A program made the position numbers and the translations under genes. The notes below the pieces were generated by a model. The model ran no database searches and was not told where the DNA came from. It saw only the letters and a list, made by a program, of their open reading frames with translations. DNA of 64,000 nucleotides from Sphaerodactylus townsendi. Its lineage: Eukaryota. This document shows positions 7,261 to 38,287 of the stretch, piece after piece; position 1 is the stretch's first letter, and the number at the start of each line of letters is the position of its first letter. Location of the stretch: positions 57,040,001 through 57,104,000 of the forward strand of contig NC_059437.1 in the NCBI RefSeq assembly GCF_021028975.2. The letters are read 5' to 3'.

Positions 7261-9134
7261 ACTCCCAGATCCCTTTCGCATATCTAACAATGCAGGTGCA
7301 AATCCTGGTTTGTTTTTTTAAGCCATAAGTTGTGACAAAAGCCCCAACCTTAAACTCCATGTCACCTAGAGAGTAAAGTTATGCTGCTCTGTAGGGGTTG
7401 CTGGAGGCATCTCTGAAGAAACAGAACCGGAGGCCTCTGGCTGTGGGCCTTTCATCCAGACTGCTAGAATGGTCTGCACGAGAATGCAGTGATGGTTTAA
7501 CTTCTTTGAGAGTAACACTCCTCTTCAGGCTGGGAGGGGTGGAGCAAGGAGCATTTAGAGCAGGGGGAAGAGAACAACCTTCGGCGGTCATGATCCTGCA
7601 ATGCGGATGGTTCCTTTTGGGAAAAGCCCCAGGTTGTGGGCAAGAGGGGAGGGTGTGGTACACTTAATACAGAGACCCTCTTGGTTAGGGTTTCCATGGT
7701 TCCCTTGCTTGCTTTAATTATTGTTCTCATGATTACTTTGTAAACCACATCGAGCAGTTCTCTGGAGAAGCCACAGGTACATTTTTTTTTAATAAGGAGA
7801 GATTCAACTTGTCCGTCAAGCAGGAGAGATCCCCCCCCCCCTCCAAGGCTGGCCCTCACAAGGGAAATGAAAATGTAGGAATCACAACCTCCTTGGACTT
7901 CCCCTTCTCTTCCATCCCCATTTCCCCTCACCAGCACAGGAGTTTTCTGAAACCCCGTCGGTGCCACTTTCTGTTCCACCTTCGATTGCCCGGCCTGTGA
8001 CATCCCAGCTGTACTCCACCTGTTTCAGGCTACATCCGGTGCCAAGGTTGCTAAGCCTGCGGGAGTGACCTTGAAGGCTTCTAGCACCACCTCCCAGCCC
8101 CGATCAGAAGGAGCAGGTCCCACGCAACTCGTTGTTCCCCTTGGCCAAGGAGTCTGTGGGCATTTCTCCCCTCCTCTCTGCTGAAGTTCAGGACCAGTAG
8201 AATTGAGCTCCATCCACCCAACATCACAATGATTGTGGAGGCCTTTCTGTGGGCTCTCGTGGGTGAGTAGAAGCAAGGGAAGGGTTTTTTTCCTCCTTCA
8301 GGGACCAGGTTGAGGGGGGGGGGCAGAGGAGAAGCAGTGTCTACCAGGTGGTCGGCGGCACCGAGGAAGTCGCTTCCTCCTAGATCTCCGCTTAACTTGC
8401 ACAGAGATGGGATCTGGGTCTAGCTGCAGGTAGGCCTTTGCTGCTGGGGAGCAGATATTGCTCCGGTCAGTTCCAAGAGCGGAGGCCTGCTGGGAATCTT
8501 ACATCGCCTGACGGAAGCAAAGAGGAGAGAGATGTCAGTAGAAATGAAGCTTTGGCGCTCAGTTTGCAAACATCTGGAGTTTGGGGGTGGGGTGGAGTTC
8601 CAGATGCTGGACACAGGGACACGCGTGGAGCTGCTTATCTTGGGGCAGGCTGTCCGTGGGCTCTCCAGGCCACTTGCCTCTGACTAGCTGCCATTTCCAG
8701 GATCTCAGCTGGATTTCTGACCCTTTGCCAGCATCTTGATTTTAAAACCGGCGGTGCTGCCAGGCCTGGTGGCTTGAGGGGGTGGGATAAGGACTCTGAG
8801 GCAAACTGCCCACTGGATTGAGTATTGTCCTCAGCTCCAGCCTTCCCTGTGGGATTCTTTAAATTCTAGCTGCCCACTAACAGGCAAAGGGGGGATTCAT
8901 GTAAAGGTCGGGTGGGGTGTCAGGCTGGAATAATTTGTGAGGCACAAAGAAATTGCTTTTTCAGAGACATTTGACTAGACAGACAAGACACAACTGGGGA
9001 TGACCAACAAAAGTTTATTTAACAGGAAAATGTAGGGTAAATGCTTTGTGTTGATGGTTTCAGTATATATGGGAATTGCTTCAGTCCCGCAAGGCCTATC
9101 AGGTGGAGCTGATCCACCTGGCCTTAAGCCAGGC

Positions 9135-16090: not shown

Positions 16091-16856
16091 CTTTCCCAGC
16101 CTCAATCTCCTTCAGATTTTTGGGTTGCAGTCAACAGAATAATGTGTTTATTGTTCCTGTCACCTCCTCTGTAAAAAGGGCCATCAAAGGGTCCAATAAG
16201 GCTTTCTGCTGGTGACTTCCAGTCAAAAGGCATCTCATATTTTTTAAGAGCATCTGCGTGCCGGCCTTCCCATTCACAGGGCATTCTGCCTATCAGCTTA
16301 GGACCATGGTGGCAAACCTTTGGCACTCCAGATGTTATGGACTACAATTCCCATCAGTCCCTGCCAGCATGGGACTGATGGGAATTGTAGTCCATAACTT
16401 ATCCCCTAAAATTATAAAGGTCCTTCGGCTACCATATAGACTCCCTGAGAACTATGTAATGTAATGTGGATCAGTTTAGAATGATTTTGTTTTCATTGCA
16501 AGTGTTTTCTCCTGAGTAGTTGCCTTAATTTGTGTCTCTTGTCATTTATTGTTTTCTTGCCTGATAAAAGGAGTTGTGTTTATTTTAAACTCATTAGGTC
16601 AAAGAAGGTCTCTGTCAGTTTTTCTGGAAAGAGGCCTGACATACAACCGATAATATTTCCTTGTGCTGCCAGAGAGATGTTTGAACTGAGTAGGCCTAAT
16701 CGGCGTGTTTTATGCTGCTGTATTCAGGTCATGAGGCTTTTAAATCTCCAAGAGGCGAATGCAGTGTAGGCCTTTGGATTGGGTGTGATTTGCCCCAGCT
16801 GTTTGATGTTCCAATTCTTCTCTGTCCCCAACTCACTGGGATCTGGTTCCCCGCAG

Positions 16857-17234
16857 GTGCCTCCTCATCGCTTTCTGTGATTACCCCACAAAAGCTGTTC
16901 AGGGTCTACCCTGGCCAGACAGCTTTTCTCCGTCTCTCTCTCCAGTTCCGGCAACCAGAGTGGAAATATTTCCATGCCAAATGGAGATTCCTCACAAAGA
17001 ATGTGCCCGTCCTTTACTGTGCTGCGGAGTGCAAGGCTGGCTCCAGCTCAGCAAACCACACCTGCGAGTACACTGTGGAGAAGGACGGGGCGTACGAGGC
17101 ACGGGTGGACGTTCAGGAAGGCTGTTCACTGGTGCTGATGGATGTGTGGCCAGAGGATGCCGGGAAATATGAGGTGCGCGTCCTTGCCCTGGACGAGTCG
17201 GGCAGCGCATCCTTGGAGGTGGATGTCCTGGAAG
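16857..17234 (+). CDS. Orphan Ig-superfamily receptor, V-like domain 1 exon (GASSSLSVITPQKLFRVYPGQTAFLRLSL...KWRF...SLVLMDVWPEDAGKYEVRV...SASLEVDVLE)
   Basis: 378-nt symmetric phase-1 exon (ccgcag / G|gtaatg), stop-free; C-strand Trp, SLxLxxVxxxDAGxY V-set motif, N-glycosylation sequon NHT. Confidence 0.85.
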
Positions 17235-17549
17235 GTAATGGAAGAGATCTGAGCTCCCCAGGGCCACGGCAGCCCCAGGGATCAGCCAACCCTGTGTCAA
17301 GAAAAGGAGCACGGGGCCGTTCAGGGTTTCCAATTACAGTGGAGCCCACATTGTCTACAAAAGAAGGTAACGGGGGGGGGGGGGCGGGCAAAATAGGCCA
17401 TGCTTGAAAGGTGCATGAAGAACAGAAAAGTCTTAAGATATTGGATGTTCTGGGAAAAGAGATGGGGTGAGCATCCCTCTGCCGGCCATCCCTGCAAGGA
17501 AAGCCATCTTGGGCCAAAGGGTCACGGCTACCTTTCTGGACCAAACAAG

Positions 17550-17592
17550 ATGCGGCTCTGGCTTCTGTTCATAAGCTCTTTACTTCTGTCAG
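17550..17592 (+). CDS. Candidate internal leader exon upstream of V-like domain 2 (MRLWLLFISSLLLS-G)
   Basis: aacaagATG context, typical signal-peptide composition, ends in phase 1 at CAG|gccgtt (weak non-canonical GC donor). Confidence 0.3.
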
Positions 17593-18482
17593 GCCGTTAA
17601 CAACACTCCTGCAAGCTTGAGCCCACACACCACAGCACTACACCAACCTCTTCCATCCCAACCTGGTTCCTGTTTAGCATTCTCAGGAGGTTCCCTCCCT
17701 CCTGGGAGCCCCTTGCTCCAACCTCCTAGAGATTGTCGAGCTTGCCCTGCTGACCTGAAGCTGGCTCTTCAACCTTTCTGGCCCTCCTCCTTGATTGCAG
17801 CCTGGCTGGGGCTGTGCTGACCCCACCTCATTCTCTAAGGCTGCAGTGGGCTGCTGATTGCAGCTTGGCTAGGGTTGTGCTGCCTCCACCCTGTTACCTG
17901 GAACTGCTGAGGCTTGCTCTTGCTGCTCGGGTTCTCCTGCCATTTCTCTAATGTTCCTTCTTGCTGCTGGCTTCCTGGAGGTCCCTGCTCCAGGGACGGA
18001 GAAGAGAATGGTGTAAACTGCATTCCCTTTCGGGAGAAAGGCCAGATATAAATTAAGAAAATAATGGTGATAATAATTAATGTGCATTCAACTCCTAAAG
18101 ACCACATGCTCTGGGATCTCCTATTTCTCCATTGGGCAAACTGTACTATATAAGGTGAAAAAGTAATCACCCTGGATGGAACTTGTTGGAAGCAATGCGG
18201 TGGATCCAAGCCCTCTCCTGTCACTTCACTGGGTCTCTGTGTGGGCATTTGTGGCAAGAAGGGGGGTGGACGTTGCAGCTGCCAGTGAATGGGACTAGAT
18301 CCTTGGCACACCGGCGACTTTTGAAAGAGTTGCACTGGTGGGACTGAAGCACACTGGCCTTCTCCATTTACTGGGACCAGTTGGAAGCTGTGTGAGATTT
18401 TGACTTTGGACATCTTGGTGTCTTGACTGTACAGGACATCTCCTATGTAAAGACTCCAACTGCCCTCTTCTTTCGCCCCCAG

Positions 18483-18875
18483 GTCTGCCCTCGTCTGATT
18501 TGGTTTCCTGGCCGCTGCGTGCCATCTCTGCCGCTGTCCACCACACAGCTTGGCTGCCCATCCAGCCTCTGGACCACGCCTGGACGTTCCTTATCATCAA
18601 ATGGGAGTTTGTCACCACCAACAGGAGCAGACCTATCCTGGTCTACTTCGTGGACAGTTGCAACGGGACCATAGGTGAATGGTGGGAGAGGGAATGCACC
18701 ATTCACAAAACAGTGGCTGTCGAGTACCAGCAGCGGGTGAACATCCTCAGGAATGGTACTTTGGTGATTCACAGCGTGGACTTCAAGGATGCTGGAGTGT
18801 ACCAGGCCACCATATGGACCTCGAGTGGCAAAGTCCAGGCAGCAGTGAATCTCACAGTGATTCCTGGGCAGAAAG
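18483..18875 (+). CDS. Orphan Ig-superfamily receptor, V-like domain 2 exon (GLPSSDLVSWPLRAISAAVHHTAWLPI...IKWEF...NGTLVIHSVDFKDAGVYQATI...AAVNLTVIPGQK)
   Basis: 393-nt symmetric phase-1 exon (ccccag / G|gtgggt), stop-free; CD2/CEACAM-like RVxIxxNGTLxIxxVxxxDAGxY motif; four N-glycosylation sequons. Confidence 0.85.
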
Positions 18876-20052
18876 GTGGGTGGCCTGCAGGTTCTAGATG
18901 TAGTAATCAACAACAACAGGCAGAGAGGAACATAAACCACTGACTTGAGCTGTACCTGCTGGAGGGATTTATTCCCTCTGTGGCTCTGGTGTGATCTTCA
19001 GGGCCAAGATTCAGAGATGCCTCCTGGAAGTACAGACCTTGTCATGCTCAGCTTCAACGTACTGGTGAGCAGGCAACCCAAATGCTTCTCTGGCTTAGAG
19101 GGGATATCTGTGTCCTCCCATCCCCCACAGAGCCACGTCTTCTCTGTCTGTGGCTGCTGGTGTTGCACAAACTGTGGAAGTTCTCTGCCTCTTTTCCTTT
19201 GGGAGAGCCCTTCAGGGTTGATCCAAGGGGGTGGGGGAGGATCCAAGGAAAGAGTTCCACCCCGCCCTGCACACTATGCAGTCCACTAATAGGTGCAATG
19301 AATGAAACATAGAATGCAAGCCTGATGAAGACATTGCCTAAAGATAAGAAGACGAGGCCTAGAGGGTTAGGGTGGATTGCCTTGCCTTTCCATGCGCAGG
19401 GTCCCGGGTAAGCTCTGTGGCACATTCAGGTAAAAGACCAGAGTGAAAAATGCGGAAGCCCCACTTTTAAGAAAGCTCTGCCCCTTGGAAGGCACGGGAA
19501 ATATCCTCAGGGCGGGTAGATCTTAAGAGCAGAGAAAATGGCTGGAACATACTGTGGTGGCCCATGGCTGTCAACACCACCTCTGTCTCTATCAGTCACT
19601 CGCGACTACAAGGGGTGGTGGTGGTGGAAAGTACCGTCAAGGCATCACCAACTCACAGTGACCCCATCAGGTTTTCAAGATAAGAGGCAGACAGAGGTGG
19701 TTTCCCATGGCCGGCCTCTGCGTAGCAGCCCTGGACTCCCTTGGGGGTCTCCTGTCAAAGCGCTGATCAGGGGTGGCCTTGCTTAGCTTCTGAGATCGGA
19801 TCGGCTCAGGCCAGCCTGGGCCGTCCAAGTCAGGATTACTGCGAGGGAGCTGGCTACAATCCAGGGTGTCCCTTTTGCCGGGAACCCTCCAGAGATTCTG
19901 TGAGAAGGGGCGAGGCTCATCAGTCCCACAAGCAGAGAAAGAAGAGGAGTTTGCATTGATGCCCCACCTTTCTCTCCTGTAAGGAGTCTCAGCTTACAAA
20001 TTCACTCTCCTTCCTCTCTGAGAGGGCTAAAACCTCCTGAGAGGGCTAAAAA

Positions 20053-20360
20053 GGGAGCAGCAGTGGCGTAGGAGGTTAAGAGCTCGTGTATCTAATCTGG
20101 AGGAACCGGGTTTGATTCCCCGCTCTGCCGCCTGAGCTGTGGAGGCTTATCTGAGGAATTCAGATTAGCCTGTGCACTCCCACACATGCCAGCTGGGTGA
20201 CCTTGGGCTAGTCACAGCTTCTCGGAGCTCTCTCAGCCCCACCTATCTCACAGGGTGTTTGTTGTGAAGGGGGAAGGGCAAGGAGATTGTAAGCCCCTTT
20301 GAGTCTCCTACAGGAGAGAAAGGGGGGGATATAAATCCAAACTCTTCTTCTTCTTCTTCT
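20053..20360 (+). mobile_element. Young Squam3-like SINE inserted into an older, oppositely oriented copy (about 19940-20530)
   Basis: Near-identical to 15438-15746; flanks are the two halves of a diverged minus-strand copy. Confidence 0.85.
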
Positions 20361-20634
20361 CTCCCCACAACAGACATCATGTGTAGCGAGAATTAGAGTG
20401 AGAGCGAAAATTCTCAGAGAACTGTGACTGGCCTAGAAGTCACCCAGTAGAGGAAACTTTCATGTCTATAAAGGAACAGGGAAACAAACCCCATTCACCA
20501 GATCAGAACCCGCTGCTCTTGATCACTGCTCCACGCCAGCTCTTGGCGGCACTTCAGAGAGATACCTTTGTTCAAAAACCAGAAAGTGATGCATTTTGCT
20601 TTTTCTCTTTGGAAATCCTCCCCTCCCATTGCAG

Positions 20635-20723
20635 GGACTTCAAGAAGCCTCCACCTTGAAAATGTTGCCCGAATTATTTTGGCTGGCATTCTCCTCTGCT
20701 TCCTGGGGCTGTTGGTAGGGGAG
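20635..20723 (+). CDS. Orphan Ig receptor transmembrane exon (GTSRSLHLENVARIILAGILLCFLGLLVGE)
   Basis: ttgcag acceptor in phase 1, strong GAG|gtgagt donor; hydrophobic helix with ENxxR...LAG...LG...E pattern of FcR-gamma-coupled receptors. Confidence 0.8.
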
Positions 20724-20839
20724 GTGAGTGAGTTCTTTGGAGAAAAGCAAAAGGGAGGGAATTTGATGTGAGTGTTTGTGTGTGTGTGTTTGTGTGTGTG
20801 TGTGTGGACTCTGTTTTCTTTCTCCCTTCCCTTGGTCAG

Positions 20840-20923
20840 ATGCTCTGGCTATGCCAGACCACTCCTCTCAGACAGACCCTGTCTTCTCAGCCTTGTTTGA
20901 ACAGTTCTCAGACACCTTCCTAG
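20840..20923 (+). CDS. Probable terminal exon of orphan Ig receptor: short cytoplasmic tail (MLWLCQTTPLRQTLSSQPCLNSSQTPS*)
   Basis: First good polypyrimidine tract plus cag after the TM donor (116-nt intron), phase 0, TAG at 20921-20923; candidate AATAAA at 22955-22960. Confidence 0.55.
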   Translation: MLWLCQTTPLRQTLSSQPCLNSSQTPS

Positions 20924-21249
20924 CTCTTAAGTGTGCAGCTCACAGCAGCCACATCCACACAAAGCTGCTTTGACATTGGACGGCTCTTAAGGCCTGAACC
21001 TCTTTGTGTATGACTAGTGTGCATGTTTGGAGAATGGGGCTGTCCATAGCACAAGCTGTGCCCTACCACAAGGAAGGGGTTGGAGACAGTGGCCTTGGGA
21101 AGGGGGAGGGGCTTGGAGAAAGTGGGGGGGCATGCCTGCCTTTGCTGCAGCTTCATCTTTGTTTGGGGTCAAGAGGAGCATCTCCTTGTGTTCCTCCATA
21201 CCTTCCTTCAGGGTGTGTTGCCTCCCCTTTGATATAGTGGCTTCTTCTG

Positions 21250-21513
21250 TGTATCTAATCTGGAGGAACCGGGTTTGATTCCCCGCTCTGCCGCCTGAGC
21301 TGTGGAGGCTTATCTGGGGAATTCAGATTAGCCTGTGCACTCCCACACACGCCAGCTGGGTGACCTTGGGCTAGTCACAGCTTCTCGGAGCTCTCTCAGC
21401 CCCACCTACCTCACAGGGTGTTTGTGTGAGGGGGAGGGGCAAGGAGATTGTCAGCCCCTTTGAGTCTCCTGCAGGAGAGAAAGGGGGGATATAAATCCAA
21501 ACTCTTCTTCTTC
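21250..21513 (+). mobile_element. 5'-truncated Squam3-like SINE
   Basis: Near-identical to other copies from gtgtatctaatctggagg to the TCT tail. Confidence 0.85.
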
Positions 21514-23560
21514 TACTGTCTTGCCTTTGGTGCCACTGGAGAAGATGCCTCCATGACTCTGGCCCTTAGAGCTTTCTTTTCACTGTGGCGCTGTCCGTGG
21601 TGCTGGTGCTTCCTGTCCCCAGCTCTTGTGGTCTGACAGCCACAGTCCGGACCTGGACATTGGTGAGGTCATAACTCTGGCTCTTCCTGGCTCTGGTGCT
21701 GTGTGAGTTTCTGTTTCTAGCTCAGTGAGTCTTGGATCTGGGAAGGTGGAAGACCTCGGTCTTCTGTGGGTTGTGAGCGTGGTGGACAGAGAGCTTTGCT
21801 TCCTTGTTGCATAGAACTGGAACACTGCTGGTGTGAAACAAATGTATGGGGAGTCTGCTAAAGCTCTGAGGACTGATGAGTTTCCTTTACTTTCCCCAGC
21901 ATGTCTGGACAACCATCTGCCCTGGACCTCCAAGCCAGGCCAGGAAAGGGGACGGAGCTCTGCTATGACTGGGCTTGACAAGAAGGATGGACCCATCGAC
22001 CCCTTTCATGGATCAACCTTCTTTGGAAGGCTGGGAAATTCCCATCATGCATTTGCCTCAATGCCCCGCCATCACTGCTTGATATTTTGCAAGACTGTTG
22101 TGTCACCTGCAGCTCTCTCTCACACAGTGATGTGAAACTTGATCTGGATATTCCAGAACCCTGATGGAAGGAACACCCAGGGGCAAGCACATGGCGCATA
22201 CTTATGCGCACGGAGGCAAAATTATTCCATGGCATTTGGCTTTCTATGCCCCAAACCATGTTGAGGGTGCATATGGCCAGTAGTATTACATGCAAATTGA
22301 CAGTTTCAGATCTCTGTAATGCACGGCAGCACCTTCTACCAACTCTCAGCTGGCTGTGCCAACTGCAGCCTTCTCTCGAGAGGAATCACTCAGCCATGGC
22401 TGGCAAGACCCTGGACATACAGCAGCGGGCGCTGGGAGAGTGGGGGGAGATCGCAGTGAATCTCCTGTGTTGAGCAGGGGTTGGACTACGGTGGATTCTG
22501 CACAGAGTTTTGGGGGAGAACTTTGCACAGCTCTCTTCCCCAAAATGAATTCAGCACGTTATATTTCTCTCAACCTGGGTTTTTCAAAGATCGCCAACCA
22601 AGTAACCTTTTCCCCTCAACCTGGGTTGAGGATGATTCCTGCCTGGTGAACAGTGGCATAGCACCAAGGGGTGGCAGGTGCACGATTTACCGGGCACGCA
22701 CCAGTGCAGGGGTGTGGCAGGGCAGGCGAGGGCACGTGCCCCAGGCATAATTCCTCCTCGCTCTGGCCCTGTTGCTGAGCAAATGCCAGCAGGCCGGAAA
22801 CGTTTTATTTCTCCCGCCCAAACTTCTTACTTTCATTTTCGCTGCTCCTGCCTGCCAGTTTGTGGTTTGCAGGAGATTCTCCGTGGAGATTCCCCATGGA
22901 AGTTTCCACTGCTTGCAGCCCATCCATTTGCTATTTCATTGTAAAAAGTAGACAAATAAAGTTTGTTTTGCCTAGCGATCCCATGCATGTGTCATTTCCC
23001 CCCATTTTTTTTGCTGTTTTGGGGGGGATATCTGCAAAGTGGTTCTCACAGATGTGAAGACATCAAAGTGCAATTTGCCATGGATTTTTTGAGCCCAATT
23101 ACAGGAAAAACTGACCCTCTGGCGGTCTTCCTGGAACAAAGTTCCATTCCCAGGGAAAGGGAATGCTGTGAGAAATGGTTTGATTGGATTAAGACCTGGA
23201 AGCGCCCAACTCTTGATGAGTTTTGACCTGCTAAAACAAAGAAACTCTGGAAGATTGATGACCCTTCATAGCTGGATAGGAGGTTTAAGATTGAGTTAAC
23301 ATTTGGGAGAAAACTGCGCAGTGTGATCTAGCTGGTGTGCAGATGAAATCAAGGTGTGGCCATTTGCAAGCTCGTTGTGAAGTTGGAACCAGGTGTACCA
23401 TCTTACCACATTCAAGCGCAGCTGAGCCCTCATGACACTGTCTGAAGCCATGCATACTTAATTTGGGAGAGAAAAGACAGACACCACGTGTCAGTCAGAC
23501 CCTCTTGATATCAAAGTCCTTGAGTTAAGGTTGGGGCGCCATCTTACCCTTGCTCTATGC

Positions 23561-27117: not shown

Positions 27118-28849
27118 CTGCAAGAGGAAGGAAGAGCATGAGCTGGCGAGGGGCACAGGAAAGCACCAGGTGCCGTGGGTGGGTGGGATGGGGCTGTAGT
27201 ACACCAATTGCCAAAGTCAGATGCTGGTAGCCAAGCTAAAGGGGCATCTTAAGACCCGGCAGACAAAGAACTGGCCAAACTGCTTGGGCGCCTGTAAAAA
27301 AGCACAGAGATCAATTTCACCCACCCCTGGCCCAAGAACTCCTCACTAGTCCTTAAAACTACTTTGGCACCCTCCCATGGAGTTGTTCTTTGGAGGCAGG
27401 CCCCGATCTCCCCTTCTCAGCTTCAAGGCGCTCTCTGTTTATGTCTTCACCACCTCAGTAGGTGAGGAGGACTCTGGTGTTTTGAATTTTAACTGGCAGG
27501 CTCCCCCCGGTGAATTTGGTTACCAGGCACCTCCCTTCCTCAGTATTACTTGCTTATACGTTGTGATTGCATTATTTTATAATTAAATGTTGCTTTTAAT
27601 GGTTAAAATGTTTTAAATTTGTTTATGCTCGTTGCCTTACAGACACTAATTGTGTGGAAGGGCGGGATAACAGTGATTTTAGATACATAGAAATACATCA
27701 AATTTAGCCCATTCCTCCACATTTCCAATTCTGTGGCGAATTCGGGCCGCGGCTCCATTAGCGTGAGGGGCGAGCTGCTCGCTCTTGGGTTCCATTCCTG
27801 AAAGGCCCCTTTGAACACTAACGGACGGAGGAATTCATTGCAGCGGCTCTTCAGTTTTTACTGCTGTCCTGTAAGAAATGTGATTTCTGCTGCCCAGCCA
27901 GCCTTGTGACCAATGGGATGTGGCCGCCGGACAAACAGAACTCAGGAGTCGGTGCCCCTGTTCCGATCTGCAAGGCGCCGTTACAATAAATGAAACACGG
28001 ACCAGCATGAGGGAAGGCCACCTTTTATATTTCAGTTCCAGGAGGCTGCACAATCTACGCACAAACAAGGTCAGAGGTGGGGGGGGGGGCAGGGAAAGAA
28101 GGTAAAAAAAATCTAGCAGAGAGCTGGATTCAAGTCCAGGAGTATCTTTGAGAGCCACAAAAGAGTCAGGATATGAGGTTCTGAGAGTCCCACTGGCCCT
28201 GAATCCTGCTCTTCTCCTGCAGGCCGCCTGCTTGCCCTCGCCAACTCTCTCCAAACCATCTTGCCAGCCTCCCTGCCGCATACAAAGGGCACAGGAAGGG
28301 ATGGGCATCTCCTCTGCCCTTCACATCAGGGGGGGGGGAGGCTCAGCTGCTTCCCAGACAGCCACGAGCTCCCTCGGGTGAAGTCTCTTGGCTCCCATCC
28401 AGGCTCCCCGGCCTGGAGAGAATGTGGCCGGGCCAAGGCTAACGAAGAGGCCTACTCCGGTAGGGTTGCTGAAGGTTAGGCCGAGAGCATAGAGCAGCCT
28501 TTCTAGGGGCTGGAAGACAAGCTGCCCAGTGGCTTAGGGGGTGGGGGTGCCGCGTCCTCTGCAAAGTTGGCCCATGAAACCCTTCCCGGGGATTCATTCT
28601 GCTGACCTTTGACACAGGGCTGCCTGGCCCTATTTAGGAAGCCTCTGGAGATAATGGGGGGGATGGAGGGGGGAGAGCGACCTCGGTGGGGCCCAGAGAC
28701 AGGGACCCCGCCCCCAAGAATCATCCCTTTTCTCCTGGGGGACTCTCTGTCGTCTGGACAGCGCCTGTCAGTCAGGGGGTGCCTACCGGGAGGCTGGTCT
28801 CCCTATGTTGCCCCCACCCCCATCTGTCACCCAATGCAGAGATTCGGGG

Positions 28850-29900
28850 GGGGAGGGGAGCCCAGGAGGATGCCCTGCGGTCCCACCCCCCACCCCCGGC
28901 AGCCGGCCCGTCCCTGGCTCAGGGGCTGCAATGCGGGCGCCGCCGATTGACATTTGGGGGCGCGCGGCGCTTAAGCCGGAGCAGCGGGTCCCTCCCTCCC
29001 TCCCTCCCTCCCCAGCCCCGGCCGCTCGTGCTCCTGCTCCGCGGGGGCCCCCACCAGGACCCCCCCCCGCCCGCCCCAGCCTCACCCAGGTTCTGCGCCC
29101 GCAGTACGGCGTAGGGCCGCCCCCGCTCGTCGTCCTCCTCCCCGCCGCCGGCGCCCTGGGCCAGCGCCAGCCCCGGCAGCAGCAGCAGCAGCAGCAGCAT
29201 CCTTTCCCGGGCCAGGCGGAGCCGCAGCCGAGCCCAGCACCGCCCCTCCGCTCCCCCGCCTCCGCCCCCGAGCATGTGCAGAGTGCGCCGCTCCTCCCGG
29301 AGGGGACACCGCGAGGGCCGGCGGGGCGGGGCTTCGGGAGTTGGCAACCTGGCATGTCCCCTCCCGGCCGCTGGCTCTGCCGCGAGGCTGCCCAGCAAGC
29401 CCCCGCCACCCTCTCTTGGGGAGGGAGGTTTCAGGGACCCCTGGCGATCCTCTCCTGAGCGGTGCATTCTGGGACTGGCAGTTCGGCAGAGGCAGCCGCC
29501 CGGGATTCTCCTTCTGAAGCTCCGCCCGAGCAGCGGGCACCGGCGGAGGGCATCATGGCTGCAGCCGGGGGGCGGGGGCGGGGGCGGGGGGCACAGCTTT
29601 CCTTGCATTTGGAACAGGTGGAAGAATGCGGGGCTCCCCAGCCCGGCCTGGGCCAAAAGGGCCCCTCCAAGCCCTGCGCCTCTTGGCCCTTGGCTCTGGG
29701 GTGACGTGACGGGCAGAGGAGAGGTCATGTGCCCAGTCCGGTGCCCTCGCAGCCTCACCCCCCTCTCCTGCCAGCCAGTCGATCCCGGCACAGAATTACA
29801 GGCCTGTGCTGTCCCCTTGCCTCCCTGCCCCGAAGTGGAAAAGGGCCTCACGGAGGGGCGGGGTGGACGAGGGGCGCCTTCTTCATCCAGGAGTCAGAAG
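28850..29900. promoter_or_regulatory. CpG island / promoter of C12orf76
   Basis: High GC and CpG density, tandem GGGGCGGGG Sp1 boxes at about 29570-29590, TGACGTGA CRE-like motif near 29702. Confidence 0.8.
29086..29200 (-). CDS. C12orf76: C12orf76 homologue exon 1 (MLLLLLLLPGLALAQGAGGGEEDDERGRPYAVLRAQNL); alternative in-frame ATG at 29275
   Basis: Signal peptide plus conserved RPYAVLRxQNL; G|gtgagg donor; lies in a CpG island. Confidence 0.9.
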
Positions 29901-30829
29901 ATTCCTCAGAGGCCGCCAGAGGTTGGGCGTGCAGCAGGGGCTGAAGACCCCCAGGCCTTTTCATGGGCCACACCAGCTCTGCTTGGGGGACTCCTGCAGA
30001 TTTGGGAGTGCCTCCTGGAGAGGGTGGGGGTTGGGAAGGGCAGCAGGGACAATGCCCCTCCCACTGGACCCTCCTTCGCTCCCAGGGAACGGACCTCTGT
30101 TGTCTGGAGGACTGTTGTAATGCTGGGATATTTGCACCCCCCTCCCCAGCCGGCCAGAAGGTCGGCCAACCCTCCCTAGCTTGTCACTACCAAAAGGTTT
30201 GAGAAGACAGGACCGTCCATGTCGTGTGAACAGGGCGTGAAGGAACCACACATCTCTCAGAAGTGCGCTTGTCTGAAGCTGACTGGGGGGTCTTAGGTCA
30301 GCCCCCCCCCCAGGATGGTTCTTGAGAGCAAGTGGATGAGGGAGGACAGGAGGAGGCCCTTCGGGGTCCCCATTGGACAGGAAAGCAAGGCTATAAATGA
30401 AGTACAGATTTAAAAAGAGTGGACATTTTGGAACTGGCTGGCTGGCTGAGGAATGAGCGCAGCTTTGGGTCAAGACTCCCTCAAGTGGGCCTTCTCCATT
30501 GTTCCTAATGTGAGGGGCCGGGCTTGTGAACATTGATGAAGAGAGCCCTCTTCAACGTGATGCAGTCAGAACTTTCAGGCACGTGGTCAGAGCTAAGGAA
30601 GAGCCGGCCTCTGGCAGCCAGGCAGAGCTGGAGTCTCCTGGCTGCCTCCAGCAGCTGCACACAGATGCTTTGTAAGGTTCCCGAGGGCAGCCAGGCCCCT
30701 ACGCTGGCTCTGGTGGTGGACTCAGCCTGGCTGCTGGGCCACACATGTCTGGGAGGGAAAGGACCGGAGCCCCTTGCCGAGGGTGACAGGAGGCCCGGAA
30801 TGCCCCTATGTTGCGTGCCATTTCATCAT

Positions 30830-31864: not shown

Positions 31865-32231
31865 CTTGACGGTCAATCAATAAAAGAAAGGAGATCGGAG
31901 TGATGCGGTTTCTCACGCTTCACTCAGGAGCCTATGAAAGAAACGGGGGATGGCGGGGGGGGGGCTGTAGCCCCTGCCAGATTCATCTTGCACCATTTAT
32001 TATTAATTAATTAATTGGGTTTCTAAGTCACCCCCCCCCCAAAGGGCTCAGGGCATTGTACAACATTCAATATAAACACAATAAAATCAATGGAATACTC
32101 GCAAGTGCCCCACACCTTCTCTGTGTAAATACCACTGAGTTTAACGTGCTCTTCCTCTCTAGCAAGGAAGCTCTCACGCCCACAAGGAGAGCGTTTCCCC
32201 TGCCCTGCTCCTGGCCTCCCGCTGCCCTGAC

Positions 32232-32399
32232 CTGCTTGAGAGGTCCTGGGGTCCAGACAAGCTTGTAGGCCATGTAGACAGGGATGCAGAGGAAGGAGGA
32301 GGCGCCAATGAGGTATCCCACCGAGATGCTCCAGGCTGGGTATTGGTAGTCAAACAGCGTGAGCGGCGGCTGCTCCATCAGAGAGCTGATGATGATGAA
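32232..32399 (-). CDS. slc6a4b: slc6a4b-like exon, TM12 ([56 protein letters not shown])
   Basis: 168 nt, equal to the homologous SLC6A4 exon; canonical splice sites. Confidence 0.93.
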
Positions 32400-33131
32400 C
32401 TAGACAGGGGGGGAAACAGCGGGGTGAGGGAGGAAGGAGTCAGGAGCCAACCCTCCCCCCCAGTCTTTTCCTGTCTTCTTGATGGGCTAAGTAAGGTTGG
32501 CACCACCCAGGGCGGGAGCTGGGGCACCCTGTACAGTTGCCAGCACCCACCGAGATGTCTGGAAGAAGCATTCAGACTAAGAGGACATGGGTATGTGGCC
32601 CAGCCTTTGATCTGACAGACACCCCATTCAGGAGTTTCTAATTGATTATTTCCTCATTTTCTTTTCTATTTTTTCTTCCTTTTTGGTGCTGCAAGCAACA
32701 CAAGGAATGCATAATTAGTGTGCAAAAATCAGTGGAGGGTGCCAAGGAGAAGAGCTGAGGCAGAGGTGTCCACAGTGTGAAACTCAGAGTTTTTCTACCT
32801 GATCAGCTATCCTGGAATAACAACCAGAATCCCCGATTCCAAAGCATTAGAATTTCCCCCCTGTAATGCTGAGAGCTGGAAACTTGCTCTGTTGACTTGT
32901 AGTGTGACCTATGGAAGGGTCCCAGTGGAGGCTTCTGGGAATTCAAACTGCCCTGTAAATGTCCTGAGGACAAGTCTGTTTGCTTGCATTGTTCCTTGCC
33001 CGGACTCTTGGTCCCTGCCCACCCATCCCCTGAACTGAAACCTCCTTGGGGGCTACTAGGGCCTGCCTGCTTTGCCTTCTCTGCAAGGTACAGCTCAACC
33101 AAGGGCGTCATCGTCATCACTTGCTACTCAC

Positions 33132-33232
33132 TGCCAGGAAGGTTGGGCTGATGGCCACCCAGCACACCTGCCAGTAGATCCCCGGCGTAAACCCCAGCAT
33201 GGCCTTCACGTCACTGCAGAACTGCTGGATTC
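33132..33232 (-). CDS. slc6a4b: slc6a4b-like exon ([34 protein letters not shown])
   Basis: 101 nt, canonical sites, SERT TM11 homology. Confidence 0.93.
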
Positions 33233-33955
33233 CTAAGAAGCAGAGAAAAGGTGAACCCAGCTCCTCGTCGTACCCTTGCTGTTCCTGGGGACCGGGCCTT
33301 AGATGAATCTTGGGTCCCCAAGACCTGTGAAGTGGAGCCCCATCCCCAACCTGAGGGGGGAGCCCTCCAAGGAGGGCAAGGCAACCTCCAGACAGGACCT
33401 ACAGAATTCCCAGCAAGGTCCTGGCATTACAGCTGATCTCCAAACTGCTGCAATCCACTCCTCAGGAGAAAGTATCTGCTTTGGAGGGTGGAGTCTGTGG
33501 CATTATGCCCCTCCCACACACACACACTAATGTCCCTCCCACTCTAACGTGGATGGCCCAGGCCAGCCTGAACTCATCAGCTCTTAGAAACCAAGCAGGG
33601 TCATCCCTGATAGTACCGGGAGTGAGGACCACAGAGGAATGCCTGGATCCCTCTTGAGAGGAAGGCGATGCTGAACTACCTCTGCTAGCCTCCACAGCTC
33701 CCAGAATGGCCTGCTGTGATTGGCAGCAGCAGAAGAGAGCCTTCCTCCACACCGGCTCCCTGAGCAGAGAGGCCAAAGGCCAAACCCGGGACTTTGTACA
33801 AGCAAAGCAAGGATTTGGCCCCCAAATATTGATGGCACCTCTCCACAGATTGGATGCCTTCCCTGTCTAGTCTGGCCCTTAAGGGAGGGGGGGGCCTGAT
33901 TTTGATGGTAGGGCAGAGCATTCTCCCTCCCCCCGAAGGTCAGGCCTCCTGCACT

Positions 33956-34076
33956 CATAAAACCAGGAGACAGCAACGCTTCTACAGGAGCACCCACTTG
34001 GCTGGAAAATGGAGCAAGCCGAAAGCACCAAAGAGCCTCTTCCAAAAGAGTTTTCACAATGGTATAGGATCCCCCC
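33956..34076 (-). CDS. slc6a4b: slc6a4b-like exon, TM10 (GGSY...VK..LLEE...VAVSWFY), indel-disrupted as written
   Basis: Recognisable fragments in shifting frames; about 121 nt versus 100 nt expected. Confidence 0.7.
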
Positions 34077-34689
34077 CTGTAACGTGAAGAACTGAGATTT
34101 CAGGCTGACTGCAAAATTTGGCGGGGCGGCAACTCTGCTGGCTGTAAATTCCTCAGCTAATTTTCTGAGCAGTCGCCAAAGGTTCCCCCAACCCCTAGAA
34201 TCTGGCCACAGGCTGCGGACGGTCTCTAGGCTGTCCTTGAAATAAAGAATCCTGGTGGGGTTTGGGGATGATGTCCTCTCATTACAAGATGGGCGGCAGT
34301 GGCTGGGATGGGATGGGGGGAATCAAAGAGACCTGCTGAGTGGGTCTCAGTGCAAAAGCCTGTAGTTTGGAGTGGAATTAGGGTTGCTGCCTTGGGGACC
34401 CTATTTGGATAGAAAGGAGGCTAGAAAGAAAAATAGAAGTTGGTTTTTACACCTTGCTTTACTTTGACTCTAAGTCTAAGGAGTCTCAAAGTGGCAGAGC
34501 GGGGAATCAAACCCGGTTCTTCCAGATTAGAATGCACCTGCTCTTAACCTACTACACCACTGCTGCTCCTGTGGGCAACACATACTCTGTGAAATTCAGC
34601 ACAGATCTGCGGCCAGGGCCCTTGAAGGTGGTGTGTTGGGAAGCTTGGGAAGTCCTTCCCCTGCCCTCCAATAATAATAATTCAGGTAG

Positions 34690-34693
<4 letters not shown>

Positions 34694-34731
<38 letters not shown>
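34694..34731. repeat. (GA)n microsatellite
   Basis: Direct reading. Confidence 0.95.
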
Positions 34732-34733
<2 letters not shown>

Positions 34734-34758
34734 CAAAACTCTCCCCTCAGCCACTCAC

Positions 34759-34890
34759 ATTGGTCAGGGTGGCCAGAGAACCGAGAAAGCACACGGTGAT
34801 CAGCCCCAAGACAAACCGCTCTCTTCGCTTAGCCAGGAGATGTGGATATTCGTCCATGATGGCCGTGATCACAGCTTCCAGGCCCCCAAA
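34759..34890 (-). CDS. slc6a4b: slc6a4b-like exon ([44 protein letters not shown])
   Basis: 132 nt, canonical sites, SERT TM8-9 homology. Confidence 0.93.
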
Positions 34891-35751
34891 CTGCAAATCC
34901 CCCACACACAAAAGAAACACTTTTCAGCCTGAATCCCCAGAGCCAGCCTGCTGGAGATCTCTGGTGGACGCTGGTCAGTGTAGCCGCCCTCTGGTGTTGC
35001 CCAAGTTTGCCACCTGGTTTACAGCCGGACCCCATAACTCTGTTCCACAAACACCAGGCACGGAGCTTTCCCCACCACTGGAGGCTTTAGGCCCATCCTC
35101 CGTCTTTTGGACAGAAAAGTTCATAAGAACATAAGAACATAAGAACAAGCCAGCTGGATCAGACCAGAGTCCATCTAGTCCAGCTCTCTGCTACTCGCAG
35201 TGGCCCACCAGGTGCCTTTGGGAGCTCACGTGGGTGATGTGAAAGCAATGGCCTCTGCAGGCTTTTGTAATTCGATCACCTGGACTGCTAAGACATATGC
35301 AATCTCAGATCAAAGAGGATCAAGATTGGTAGCCAAAGCAACTGAGGAAGATACCCAGGGTTGCTAACCTCCAGGTGGCTGCTGGAGGGGTTTCCAGACT
35401 ACAGCTGTCAGAGGATTCGACTGGAGAAATGGCGAAGAAACTTTGGAGGGTTACGGGCTCTATGTCTTGCCTCTCCCACGAGTCCCCTCGCCTACCCTCC
35501 CATGTTATGTGGGAGGGGACGGTCTCAGAAGGTGCTGTTGGAGGGATTCCTACTCTGCCCCATGACGGTTGACTTGTGGGGTACTGCAGGGTTCCACTTT
35601 ATTCCTCCATGCTACTTAATGTGCATACAAAGCTGCTGGGAGAGACTGACAGGAGATGAGGGCTGCGAGGTCACCAAGAGGTGGAATAATAGTCAGTTCT
35701 TTCTTTCCACCTAATTCCAAGGATGTTGTTGACAGCCTAAGCCAGTGCCTA

Positions 35752-37187
35752 TGTAAACCCCATGCTCAGAATGGGTTGACCCAGTAAGGGGTGGAGACTC
35801 AAAGCAGCAGAAGGCTGCAGAGCCCGCGAAGTTTGGAGAGAAGCAAGGTACCGCCAGACTTCGACCTTGATTTGAATAAGCCCTTAACAAAGGTTTCTTT
35901 TGCTTGATTGTAATGGGTGAGAGTTCTCCTGGAAACCTTCATCATATTGAATCCTGTTCACCAAGCCCTTGGAGTCTTCAGGACCCAACCCACTTGCAAG
36001 AAGAATTGGACTTGGCAGTATCAGTAGACTGTAAATATAAGGACTTGAAAATGCAACCTGAACAGGACCTTGAAGTGTGATGTTAAATGTTGATGTTATA
36101 TGTCAGTGGTGGCGAACCTTATGGCACGGGTGCTAGCCAGGTGGCACTCAGAGCTCCTCACTGTGGGCACGCTGTAAACAGAGTCAGCCTCCCACACATA
36201 CATACATCTAGGCTGGCTCTGGGCCTCTGGAAGCTTAAATTATTGAAGCGATTAAACCTAAGACCTAGTTTTGAACACAGGAAGCTGTGTAAGAGTAACC
36301 CTGTTAAAGTGCCTGTTAAACCCCACTGATTTTTTCTGTGAGAAGAACTAAAGCGCAACTTTAGCACCAGAGTAAGCCTGCAGTTGCTGCAATGGGGCTT
36401 GCTTCTAGAGTAAAACCTCCTAGGTCGCGGATTCACCCGCTGGAAGAAGTTGTACGGTTGCTTCAAAAGCAAAAGCCACCGACTGCCACCAAACTACTCC
36501 TGCGTAAGCGCCACCTCGGACTCCAGAGGTGGGGATCCAGCAGAGTTCTCGCTATGGTTCCCCGAGAGTAGGTTACTAATTGACTTTGTGTGCCGCAGAG
36601 GCTACTTCACCTCGCGAGGATTTTGCCACGCGGATTTTGCCTTTGAAGCTGGGCGCGCTCTCCTTCGCCAGCAGTAGTGCGCAGAACTTGAAGCAGTTCT
36701 TTAGCAGGAGGTGTTCATGCTATCGCGTGGCAGCCTGCACCTGCATGCATTTGTTTCGCCTAATGATCGCGAAATGCTGCATCCTTTGCCACAGCCCCTC
36801 CCAGGAATGCCGCTCGCTCGAATGCCTGTGGCCATGTCCCTCGTCAAGCCCAGCTCCAGCCCCATTGGCGCTACCCCAGTTTGAACTTCATCACCATGGG
36901 AACCTGTTACTAAAATTTTGGATCCCACCACTGCTCAGACCCAACCGCTTTCTAAACTAAAAGAACCTCAAGTATCTGTGGGTTAAAATTGTCGTGTTGG
37001 CACTTCTTTGCCCGATGAAATAAGTGGGTTATGGGTTGCAATTTGGGCACTCGGACTCAAAAAGGTTCGCCATCACTGTTATATGTTAATAAAGTAAACC
37101 ATTTTGTTGTTTTAAAAATTTGTTGTTGCAAACTCTATCTCAAGTACCGGCCCCACAGAACTCCATTGGCCAGATAGAGAGGTTACA
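35752..37187 (+). mobile_element. Probable solo LTR (about 450 bp net) split by nested MITEs
   Basis: TGTAAACC...GGTTACA termini, internal AATAAA near 37088, imperfect 4-bp TSD CCTA/CCTG. Confidence 0.45.
36104..37078. mobile_element. hAT MITE (same family as 58430-58919) with a second MITE nested at 36524-36933
   Basis: CAGTGGTGGCGAACC...GGTTCGCCATCACTG TIRs, 8-bp TSD TTATATGT; inner element has the termini of 14173-14713 in opposite orientation. Confidence 0.85.
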
Positions 37188-37299
37188 CCTGCAGCCAGTC
37201 ATGGAAGCTGGATTAGAGGTAGAACAAAGCTTGAAACTCGAGACTCTGACTGTAGTCGAAGGTTCCCCGGAGTTCGTGAGCAGGAAGAGCAAAACTGTG

Positions 37300-37880: not shown

Positions 37881-38027
37881 CAACCTGTCCACTGGTTTTA
37901 TGCTTCCTTATTATAGTTGATTCATTTTGCCAGCTGCCTGGAGCGCCCTCGGAAGGAAGGTGGCAAAGAGAGAGGCCAAGCGAATGAATAAGCAGAGGGT
38001 CGGGGCAAGGGATCCACGCAGCCTTAC

Positions 38028-38155: not shown

Positions 38156-38287
38156 TCATGGAGGAACTGCATTGTGCCACCTTCCATCAGGCAGAGGCAC
38201 GGAGGAAACGGAGCCCAGGTGGGCCAAGAGAGACCCTCCTCTACATGGAGGCGGAGGACTTCCTCTCCCTCTCCCATCATACTAGGT

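What the first reader, a model, noticed from the sequence alone, without database searches (positions are those of the whole stretch)
16857..20923. Orphan Ig-superfamily receptor joining CD2/CEACAM-type V domains to an FcR-gamma-type activating transmembrane segment
Seen: four phase-compatible, stop-free exons with canonical splice sites (16857-17234, 18483-18875, 20635-20723, 20840-20923) encoding about 314 aa: V-like, V-like, TM, 27-aa tail with no tyrosine. The TM reads ENVARIILAGILLCFLGLLVGE. Established: ENxxR..LAG.....LG.L..E with an Arg at the outer end of the helix characterises activating leukocyte-receptor-complex proteins (LILRA, GPVI, FCAR, NKp46, OSCAR), which signal through FcR-gamma/CD3-zeta ITAM adaptors, but those use C2-type Ig domains. 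I recall no such gene between ANKRD13A and C12orf76 in human. Inference: a non-mammalian activating immune or thrombocyte receptor with a domain combination I cannot assign to a named family, located outside the known receptor clusters.
Basis: partly seen in the sequence, partly recalled or inferred. Interest (0 to 1): 0.88.

Follow-up and report, generated by a model that had tools for sequence, protein, structure and literature searches.

The report
Gecko V-domain receptor with FcR-gamma-type membrane anchor
This is a real, already annotated but unstudied gecko gene for a cell-surface protein with two antibody-like V domains and the membrane segment that activating immune receptors use to recruit the FcR-gamma signalling chain. 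It belongs to an unnamed family found across reptiles, a bird and amphibians, so it is not a one-off orphan.

Summary
The window is from Sphaerodactylus townsendi and the gene is NCBI LOC125443018, "uncharacterized protein".

**Exons**
Two other geckos and the NCBI models use 21900-21968 as the last coding exon, giving a 22-aa tail with no tyrosine.

**What the parts are**
- Both Ig domains fold as V-set domains. They lack the canonical disulfide and carry a conserved alternative Cys pair.
- They are no closer in structure to CD2, SLAM or CEACAM than to nectin, TIGIT or PD-L1.
- The TM fits the published "NxxR-TM" of FcR-gamma-associating LRC receptors: NVAR, with Glu-His at the inner end.
- Paralogues also carry the upstream DYT motif.

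**Context**
- Relatives occur in squamates, turtles, an alligator, a bird and amphibians, and none is characterised.
- Paralogues lie beside C-type lectin or butyrophilin-like genes.
- The gecko copy lies between ANKRD13A and a SERT-like gene.
- NxxR-TMs on non-LRC ectodomains are already known in Xenopus.

**Verdict:** a new variant of a known kind. FcR-gamma coupling is inferred, not shown. TM-skipping (soluble) isoforms may predominate.

The parts
8229..8262 (+). Leader (signal-peptide) exon, MIVEAFLWALV plus the first base of a Gly codon; donor GTGAGT at 8263
   Evidence: Found by a scan for ATG, a hydrophobic run and a phase-1 GT donor. The DNA is conserved in Paroedura and Gekko kuhli, including the ATG and the donor. 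It is the N-terminus of NCBI isoform X3, P0191.
16857..17234 (+). V1 exon (phase 1 to phase 1), a V-set Ig domain without the canonical disulfide
   Evidence: Open frame and splice sites. 61-67% aa identity in two other geckos. AF2 pLDDT 88.9. VIA Z 15-16 to IgV domains. An RNA-like unitig starts at 16856.
17235..17366 (+). Optional extension of the V1 exon to an alternative donor, adding a 44-aa linker (GNGRDLSS...STKEG)
   Evidence: Present in NCBI isoforms X1-X3. Run X4 covers this bin at exon-like depth. Turtle relatives have similar EGNRGEASP... stalks after V1.
18483..18875 (+). V2 exon (phase 1 to phase 1), a V-set Ig domain with the conserved C...WWERxC pair
   Evidence: 58-65% identity in other geckos. 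AF2 pLDDT 87. Foldseek and VIA hit IgV domains. RNA-like unitig 18481-18875 matches the exon.
20635..20723 (+). TM exon: G-TSRSLHLE-NVAR-IILAGILLCFLGLLVG-E, an NxxR-type transmembrane segment
   Evidence: 72-76% identity in other geckos with the Arg kept. Used in NCBI isoform X2 and in P0003. The motif matches the published description.
20840..20923 (+).
   Evidence: Open, with a good acceptor. No collinear counterpart in Paroedura or Gekko kuhli. Absent from all NCBI isoforms. No AATAAA on the + strand before 22955. Run X4 has some depth in 20802-20992, so occasional inclusion is not excluded.
21900..21968 (+). Conserved terminal coding exon: HVWTTICPGPPSQARKGDGALL plus TGA. When the TM exon is skipped it is read in another frame, giving a 78-aa tail on a soluble isoform
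   Evidence: Conserved in Gekko kuhli (E 5e-5) and Paroedura. An RNA-like unitig starts at 21898. NCBI isoforms X1-X4 use it.
22955..22960 (+). First AATAAA downstream on the + strand; candidate polyadenylation signal
   Evidence: inference only.

Best explanation
LOC125443018 of Sphaerodactylus townsendi is an intact gene under purifying selection. It encodes a type I membrane protein made of a signal peptide, two tandem V-set Ig domains, an NxxR-type transmembrane helix and a 22-residue tail without signalling motifs. Each V domain lacks the B-F disulfide and instead has a conserved Cys pair stapling the C'-C'' hairpin.

The most likely mechanism is as follows. The V domains bind an unknown ligand. 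The TM arginine pairs with the TM aspartate of an ITAM adaptor, most likely the FcR-gamma homodimer. Ligand engagement then signals through ITAM and Syk, as in LILRA, GPVI, FcalphaR, OSCAR and NKp46.

Shown here: the gene structure, its conservation, the V-set fold, the TM motif and family membership. Inferred: adaptor pairing, the activating function, and expression in leukocytes.

Alternative splicing that skips the TM exon would give a soluble form.

The gene is a dispersed gecko member of an unnamed family of sauropsids and amphibians. That family also contains tail-bearing forms and type-II-oriented forms with ITIM-like motifs, so it looks like a paired-receptor family.
For: - **Exons and frames:**
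- **NCBI models:** X3 has the leader; X2 has the TM and the HVW tail.
- **Gecko orthologues:** collinear, with dN/dS 0.25-0.5.
- **RNA-like run:** run X4 has unitig ends at three splice sites and zero depth in the V2-TM intron.
- **V-set assignment:** Pfam V-set hits in 14 of 15 family members, best E 2.7e-9. AF2 models have pLDDT 87 and 89. VIA Z is 14-16 over 100-120 residues against IgV domains.
- **Cysteines:** the Cys pair is invariant and there is no Cys at the B or F strand positions.
- **TM motif in the family:** my count on the output gives Arg in 26 of 37 distinct family TM cores, 20 of these with Asn at -3. The inner end reads Glu/Asp then His/Asn. DYT lies upstream in the squamate single-V clade.
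- **Literature:** the NxxR-TM is the most conserved LRC element. Its Arg is essential for FcR-gamma association, a DYT motif lies upstream, and acidic residues lie at the C-end. Xenopus receptors with this TM were shown to associate with FcR-gamma (PMC6557307, PMC2413239, PMC4536121).
Against: - No experiment or complex prediction links this protein to FcR-gamma.
- The window gene lacks the DYT motif (it reads SLHLE), and the Paroedura orthologue has lost the Asn (AVAR).
- Three of the four NCBI isoforms skip the TM exon.
- RNA-like depth is about 15 over the TM region, against about 45 on V2 and the last exon. The membrane form may therefore be the minor product.
- The tissue of run X4 is unknown, and its kind is not on record.
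- TM similarity to LRC receptors rests on motif agreement with published descriptions, not on a scored alignment. Two searches with the TM region found nothing outside the family.
Confidence: 0.6

Rival explanations
1. The main product is a secreted two-V-domain protein acting as a soluble decoy or ligand. The TM-bearing form is then a minor splice variant of little consequence.
For: NCBI isoforms X1, X3 and X4 join V2 directly to the last exon and lose the TM. Run X4 shows about a third of the depth over 20611-20992 compared with V2 and the terminal exon.
Against: The TM exon is the best conserved part among geckos (72-76% identity, dN/dS 0.25-0.5), and the in-frame HVW tail is conserved too. 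The frameshifted 78-aa tail of the skipping isoforms shows no sign of conservation. Depth figures come from contigs and are a poor measure of level.
Confidence: 0.2
2. It is an adhesion or co-receptor molecule of the nectin, CAR or SLAM kind that works without an ITAM adaptor. The Arg is then a juxtamembrane residue with no pairing role.
For: The closest structures are adhesion-type IgV domains such as nectin-1, CD166, NTB-A, CAR and MPZL1. About 11 of 37 family TM cores have Gln, His or Trp in place of Arg.
Against: Arg lies in a conserved N-x-x-R ... E-H frame that matches the published FcR-gamma TM subtype. Paralogues add the DYT motif. A charged residue is kept inside a helix over roughly 100 My of gecko divergence (a date from general knowledge). 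The tail is too short to carry motifs of its own.
Confidence: 0.12
3. It is a true member of the CEACAM or CD2/SLAM family that has moved away from the family locus.
For: The V domains lack the canonical disulfide. NCBI names amphibian relatives "CEACAM3-like". There are weak Pfam Receptor_2B4 hits. NTB-A, 2B4 and CD48 are among the tied structural matches for V2. Xenopus CD2/SLAM members use NxxR-TMs.
Against: The second domain is V-set, not C2. Reptile CEACAMs are reported at loci syntenic with the mammalian ones and signal through ITAM or ITIM tails (PMC13278318). No CEACAM appears in the top 50 by Z for either domain, and nectin, TIGIT and PD-L1 score as well or better.
Confidence: 0.08

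Closest known systems
FcR-gamma-associating receptors of the leukocyte receptor complex (LILRA2, PIR-A, FcalphaR/CD89, GPVI, OSCAR, NKp46, TARM1; chicken ggFcR)
   Same: Type I membrane protein. The TM has Arg in an N-x-x-R motif near the outer end and an acidic residue at the inner end, followed by His. The tail is short and has no motifs. Paralogues carry the upstream DYT motif.
   Different: The ectodomain is two V-set domains without the canonical disulfide, not C2-type LRC domains. The gene is not in an LRC-syntenic region. The window gene itself lacks DYT. Adaptor binding is untested.
Xenopus FCRL-like (XFL) and CD2/SLAM-family receptors with NxxR-TMs (Guselnikov et al. 2008, 2011, as cited in PMC2413239, PMC6557307 and PMC4536121)
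   Same: They show that the NxxR-TM module is shared by non-LRC Ig ectodomains. The CD2/SLAM case pairs it with a V domain lacking the disulfide. Association with FcR-gamma was shown for XFL2 and XFL1.7.
   Different: Those receptors are amphibian families with V-C2 or C2-type ectodomains. Here the ectodomain is V-V (or a single V) with its own Cys pair, and the family is in sauropsids. Direct homology of the ectodomains is not shown.
CEACAM family of reptiles and amphibians (Zimmermann and Kammerer; PMC13278318, PMC5112662)
   Same: IgV N domains without the canonical disulfide. Tandem N domains occur. There are paired activating and inhibitory members. NCBI labels some amphibian relatives of this family "CEACAM3-like".
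   Different: CEACAMs lie at loci syntenic with the mammalian CEACAM loci and signal through ITAM or ITIM/ITSM cytoplasmic tails. Neither of the two papers read mentions arginine, FcR or positively charged TMs. Structural searches do not favour CEACAM N domains.
Nectin/TIGIT/CAR/PD-L1-type IgV domains
   Same: These are the best structural matches: Z 14-16, rmsd 1.4-2.6 A over about 100-110 residues.
   Different: They keep the canonical disulfide. Sequence identity is only 13-27%. Domain architecture and membrane anchors differ.

Membership tests
NxxR-TM (FcR-gamma-associating) receptors of the LRC type | Arg in the outer part of the TM, embedded in N-x-x-R | tested here: met
   The window reads ENVARIIL. 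Arg is kept in Paroedura and Gekko kuhli; Asn is kept in Gekko (ENTAR) and lost in Paroedura (EAVAR). The definition comes from PMC6557307 and PMC2413239.
NxxR-TM (FcR-gamma-associating) receptors of the LRC type | [quoted passage not shown] | tested here: met
   ...LLVGE|H in the window and both gecko orthologues. Glu or Asp stands there in nearly all family TM cores.
NxxR-TM (FcR-gamma-associating) receptors of the LRC type | Consensus DYT motif just N-terminal of the TM | tested here: not met
   The window has SLHLE before NVAR. DYT or DYx is present in paralogues P0111, P0174, P0176, P0179, P0182 and P0187.
NxxR-TM (FcR-gamma-associating) receptors of the LRC type | C2-type LRC Ig domains and a location in the LRC | tested here: not met
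   Both domains are V-set. The gene lies between ANKRD13A and a SERT-like SLC6 gene.
NxxR-TM (FcR-gamma-associating) receptors of the LRC type | Physical and functional association with FcR-gamma | not testable with these tools
   No FcR-gamma sequence could be obtained, so no complex prediction was run. This needs co-expression and co-IP.
Ig V-set domain | V-set profile match and a fold with C' and C'' strands | tested here: met
   Pfam V-set hits in 14 of 15 family members (best E 2.7e-9). The window's V2 scores 20.7 bits (cutoff 26) and its I-set score is 25.5 (cutoff 23.7). The AF2 models have nine or more strands. Z is 14-16 against IgV structures.
CD2/SLAM family | N-terminal V domain without the canonical disulfide, followed by a C2 domain with two disulfides | tested here: not met
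   The V domains do lack the disulfide. The membrane-proximal domain, however, is a second V-set domain paralogous to the first (24% identity).
CD2/SLAM family | V domain closer to SLAM or CD2 than to other IgV families | tested here: inconclusive
   For V2, NTB-A scores Z 14.6, 2B4 14.0 and CD48 13.7, against nectin-1 at 15.4; these are tied within about 1-2 units. None appears in the top 50 for V1.
CEACAM family | Location syntenic with CEACAM loci, and ITAM or ITIM/ITSM tails or a GPI anchor | tested here: not met
   The locus is ANKRD13A / SERT-like. The tail has no tyrosine. The criteria come from PMC13278318.

The most novel reading that the evidence does not exclude
The gene is the visible tip of an undescribed paired-receptor system of sauropsids, with amphibian relatives. 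It is built on one special V domain that lacks the canonical disulfide and has a C'-C'' Cys staple. The system has at least three formats:
- Type I receptors with the FcR-gamma-type NxxR-TM.
- Type I receptors that have lost the Arg or carry tyrosine-bearing tails.
- Type-II-oriented receptors with N-terminal ITIM-like motifs, borrowed from C-type-lectin-like NK receptor genes next to which they lie.

If so, reptiles and some birds would have an MHC- or NKC-linked Ig-based counterpart of KIR and Ly49. It would also show that the NxxR-TM module kept being shuffled onto new ectodomains in amniotes.
Probability: 0.3. Interest if true: 0.7.

Novelty: new variant of a known kind. Interest (0 to 1): 0.5.

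Why it matters
Activating Ig-like receptors that signal through FcR-gamma are known in amniotes almost only from the leukocyte receptor complex, where they have C2-type domains. Outside it, the same TM module has been reported only in Xenopus FCRL and CD2/SLAM families.

This gecko gene and its relatives indicate that sauropsids also carry the module on a different, V-set ectodomain. The family has activating-like, tail-bearing and type-II members, and they sit next to lectin and butyrophilin-like genes.

That gives comparative immunologists a defined, testable candidate family for reptile and bird innate recognition, an area where very few receptors have been characterised. It does not change any textbook principle.

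Tried and rejected
- **Spliced model not joined.** Full-length stand-ins were the database proteins P0007 (Paroedura orthologue) and the NCBI isoforms P0001, P0002, P0190 and P0191.
Only the query came back, so this says nothing about TM relatives.
- **phmmer of the TM exon against PDB sequences**: no match. PDB rarely holds such TMs.
- **Sequence searches of V1, V2 and the family profile against PDB**: only generic E-F-G strand matches (contactin, Robo, CEACAM1, JAML). Not discriminating.
- **ESM Atlas**: never available.
- **RNA runs**: none on record as RNA. One of four runs (X4) behaves like RNA when laid, but the joints table was swamped by SINE repeats, so no exon-exon joint could be read.
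- **Exon 4 as a terminal exon:** rejected, because there is no poly(A) signal before 22955, no orthologue and no NCBI isoform.
- **Extra V exons in the window:** none.
- **C12orf76:**
- **Synteny outside geckos:** Pogona, Caretta, Trachemys and Calonectris relatives are not next to ANKRD13A. The Gekko kuhli flanks were too short to tell.
- **Literature search for six family LOC identifiers:** no paper.
- **Pseudogene or artefact reading:** rejected on intact frames in three geckos and dN/dS below 1.
Full report
**Identity of the locus**

A search with the V1 exon, embedded in its own stop-free ORF and scored over the exon only, returned 100%-identical proteins of Sphaerodactylus townsendi. These are LOC125443018, "uncharacterized protein", isoforms X2 and X4, plus a UniRef model and a 66%-identical Gekko kuhli protein. 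The window is therefore from Townsend's least gecko, and the gene is already predicted but unnamed.

Each exon was searched by reference. The database proteins P0007 (Paroedura orthologue) and the NCBI isoforms served as full-length stand-ins.

**Checking the observation**

The four stated intervals are open in the stated frames, with AG acceptors and GT donors.
- Exons 1-3 are phase 1. The TM exon ends in phase 0.
- Exons 1-3 are used in the NCBI models.
- Exons 1-3 lie in the same order in Paroedura picta (L001) and Gekko kuhli (L006). Identity is 61-67% for V1, 58-65% for V2 and 72-76% for the TM exon.
- Pairwise dN/dS is 0.25-0.51 for all three exons. This means purifying selection at the relaxed level usual for immune-type Ig receptors.

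The fourth exon does not hold up.
- In both other geckos the sequence after the TM exon is HVW(A/T)..., encoded by window 21900-21968 (HVWTTICPGPPSQARKGDGALL, then TGA).
- In Paroedura the intron between the TM exon and that exon is only 249 bp.
- None of the four NCBI isoforms uses it.
- There is no AATAAA on the + strand between it and 22955.

A scan for ATG, a hydrophobic run and a phase-1 GT donor found 8229-8262 (MIVEAFLWALV|G, donor GTGAGT). Its DNA is conserved in the three geckos, including the ATG and the donor. NCBI isoform X3 starts with exactly this peptide.

By exon lengths (34 + 378 + 393 + 89 + 66 coding bases) the TM-bearing product is about 320 aa. An alternative V1 donor (exon end 17366) adds a 44-aa linker in isoforms X1-X3. 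Isoforms X1, X3 and X4 skip the TM exon, which shifts the last exon into another frame and gives a soluble product.

**Transcription**

No run is on record as RNA. When the four holders were laid on 16600-22300, three behaved as genomic DNA. The fourth, X4, did not.
- X4 has zero depth in 18892-19464 and 20993-21183, and almost none in 21566-21756.
- Its unitigs end at splice sites: 16856-17208, 18481-18875 (the V2 exon plus two ambiguous bases), and one starting at 21898.
- I read X4 as RNA-derived. It supports the V1 and V2 exons and the 21900 exon.
- The V1-V2 intron is covered at exon-like depth, which suggests retention or the long-linker form.
This fits a dominant TM-skipping isoform.
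- Exon-exon joints could not be read, because SINE repeats at about 19850-20420 and 21184-21565 filled the joints table.

**The ectodomain**

Pfam gives weak Ig hits for the single exons. For V2, I-set scores 25.5 bits and V-set 20.7. At family level, V-set is hit by 14 of 15 members, with a best E of 2.7e-9.

The family alignment shows these invariant positions: one Leu, two Cys (V2 C59 and C71; V1 C58 and C69), a second Leu, and the D-x-G-x-Y motif. There is no Cys at the B-strand or F-strand positions. In the AF2 models (pLDDT 87.0 and 88.9) the two Cys flank the loop between two long neighbouring strands (47-60 and 70-77 in V2). That fits a staple across the C'-C'' hairpin.

Foldseek and VIA-align give generic IgV matches.
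- For V2: nectin-1 D1 (Z 15.4, rmsd 1.8, 107 aligned), CD166, NTB-A (14.6), BARF1, MPZL1, CD80, 2B4 (14.0), TIGIT and CD48 (13.7).
- For V1: aggrecan G1 (16.0), VCBP3, TIGIT, nectin-4, B7-H6, PD-L1, CAR and BTN3A (15-16).
- These rows are tied. CEACAM is absent from both top-50 lists.

So "V-set without the canonical disulfide" is shown, and "CD2/CEACAM-type" is not.

**The membrane anchor**

The literature defines an "NxxR-TM" (TM1) subtype as the most conserved element of the LRC.
- It is present in activating LILRs, PIR-A, NCR1, GPVI, FcalphaR, OSCAR, TARM1 and chicken ggFcR.
- Its Arg is essential for FcR-gamma association, Asn lies three residues before it, a DYT motif lies upstream, and acidic residues lie at the C-end.
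- It is also used by Xenopus FCRL-like and CD2/SLAM-family receptors. For two XFL proteins, association with FcR-gamma was shown experimentally (PMC6557307, PMC2413239, PMC4536121).

The window's exon reads SLHLE-NVAR-IILAGILLCFLGLLVG-E, followed by H. The NxxR and acidic-end features are met. DYT is not.

Across 37 distinct TM cores of family proteins, my count on the output gives 26 with the Arg, of which 20 have Asn at -3. Nearly all end in E/D-H/N. The squamate single-V clade reads (G)RDYT-x-x-N-I-I-R-LSLAGLILCLLG-x-IIAE-N/H, which is the full published signature.

I could not score the TM against real LRC sequences. Two searches with the TM region returned nothing outside the family. The link therefore rests on agreement with the published motif.

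**The family**

An exhaustive phmmer of V2 against 1.84 billion representatives found 54 proteins at E <= 1e-10. The short, full-domain hits are all uncharacterised proteins. They come from:
- geckos, Pogona, Lerista, Anolis, Varanus, Sceloporus and snakes;
- turtles (Caretta, Chelydra, Trachemys, Chrysemys, Pelodiscus);
- Alligator sinensis;
- a bird, Calonectris borealis;
- more distantly, a newt and a frog, which NCBI labels "CEACAM3-like".

A profile search added many squamate loci, again all "uncharacterized". No paper mentions six of these LOC identifiers.

A maximum-likelihood tree of 42 domains shows the following.
- The window's V1 falls in a supported clade (99/97) with the first domains of turtle, bird and alligator proteins.
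- V2 falls in a squamate V2 clade (100/100).
- The second domains of the turtle and bird proteins are on the same side of the tree as the squamate V2 clade, though that deeper fork is weakly supported.
- The V1/V2 split therefore appears to predate the sauropsid radiation.
- Separate clades hold a single-V squamate group and a type-II-oriented group. Members of the single-V group often have longer tails containing YxxM and a C-terminal LYC(S/T)I, and some have Arg replaced by Gln or His.

**Genomic context**

In the window, ANKRD13A ends near 4050 on the + strand (UIM-rich last exons). A SERT-like SLC6 gene occupies 32.0-48.7 kb on the - strand; its best PDB matches are serotonin transporters at 1e-20. 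Paroedura has the same three-gene order.

Relatives elsewhere are not at this site.
- The Calonectris gene lies between four C-type lectin genes on a 1.2-Mb record.
- One Pogona gene lies next to a butyrophilin-like gene (V-set, C2-set, PRY, SPRY).
- Another Pogona gene lies beside a SCAN-KRAB zinc-finger gene.
- A Chrysemys type-II member lies near a C-type lectin gene.
- The Caretta gene lies beside a maestro-HEAT gene.

The gecko copy is thus a dispersed member of a family that otherwise keeps company with MHC- or NKC-type genes. I could not verify C12orf76.

**How it most likely works**

Shown here:
- an intact, conserved, transcribed gene;
- a signal peptide;
- two V-set domains;
- an NxxR-type TM;
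- a 22-aa tail without tyrosine.

Inferred from the established behaviour of this TM subtype:
- The Arg pairs with the TM Asp of the FcR-gamma dimer.
- The receptor signals through ITAM and Syk.
- The ligand, the cell type and the balance between membrane and soluble isoforms are unknown.

I put about 0.6 on the FcR-gamma-coupled activating reading. About 0.2 goes to a mainly soluble role. The remainder goes to an adaptor-independent adhesion role or true CEACAM/SLAM membership.

**Novelty**

The gene is not an orphan, and the principle (a V domain lacking the disulfide, combined with an NxxR-TM) has a published amphibian precedent. What seems undescribed is this particular V-domain family in sauropsids, its use of the LRC-type TM outside the LRC, and its type-II relatives. 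I rate it a new variant of a known kind, of moderate interest.

Noticed in passing
L007:10001-15390 (Chrysemys picta); proteins P0036, P0038, P0061, P0077, P0095, P0137, P0162: Relatives of the same V domain occur in a type-II orientation. They have an N-terminal cytoplasmic part (ITIM-like VFYADL or TVYADL in turtles), then a TM, a stalk and a C-terminal V domain. In Chrysemys the four coding blocks are collinear on one strand, with a C-type lectin gene nearby. The squamate type-II domains form a 100/100 clade. An Ig V domain at the C-terminus of a type II protein is unusual. It suggests exon shuffling with lectin-type NK receptor genes, unless these are gene-model fusions.
   Followed up: partly
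window 32000-48700, - strand: A SERT-like SLC6 transporter gene: exon peptides match serotonin transporter structures best (E 1e-20) and dopamine or noradrenaline transporters less well. It has the same neighbour in Paroedura. Whether it is SLC6A4 itself or a paralogue was not resolved.
   Followed up: partly
window 18875/21900 junction; proteins P0001, P0190, P0191: Three of four NCBI isoforms skip the 89-bp TM exon. The last exon is then read in another frame, giving a 78-aa tail and a predicted soluble protein. RNA-like contig depth is lower over the TM region than over V2 and the last exon.
   Followed up: partly
window 16600-22300, run X4: One of four public runs of the genome study, with its kind not on record, behaves like RNA. 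It has zero depth in two intron stretches, and its unitigs end at three splice sites.
   Followed up: partly
window 19850-20420 and 21184-21565: Two copies of a very high-copy SINE-like repeat (summed contig depth 10^6-10^7) lie in the introns flanking the TM exon.
   Followed up: no
Pogona vitticeps cluster of P0005 (P0157, 487 aa): One older NCBI model fuses the two V domains of the Pogona family member to a protein named "tripartite motif-containing protein 10-like". The current neighbour is a butyrophilin-like V-C2-PRY-SPRY gene. This hints at an MHC-type neighbourhood.
   Followed up: no
window 28000-30000: A CpG-island-like stretch (GC 0.67) lies between the Ig gene and the 3' end of the SERT-like gene. 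Its ORFs have no Pfam hit.
   Followed up: partly
window 16857-17234: S. townsendi V1 has two extra cysteines (LYCAAEC and EGCSL) that Paroedura and Gekko kuhli V1 lack. Whether they pair is unknown.
   Followed up: no
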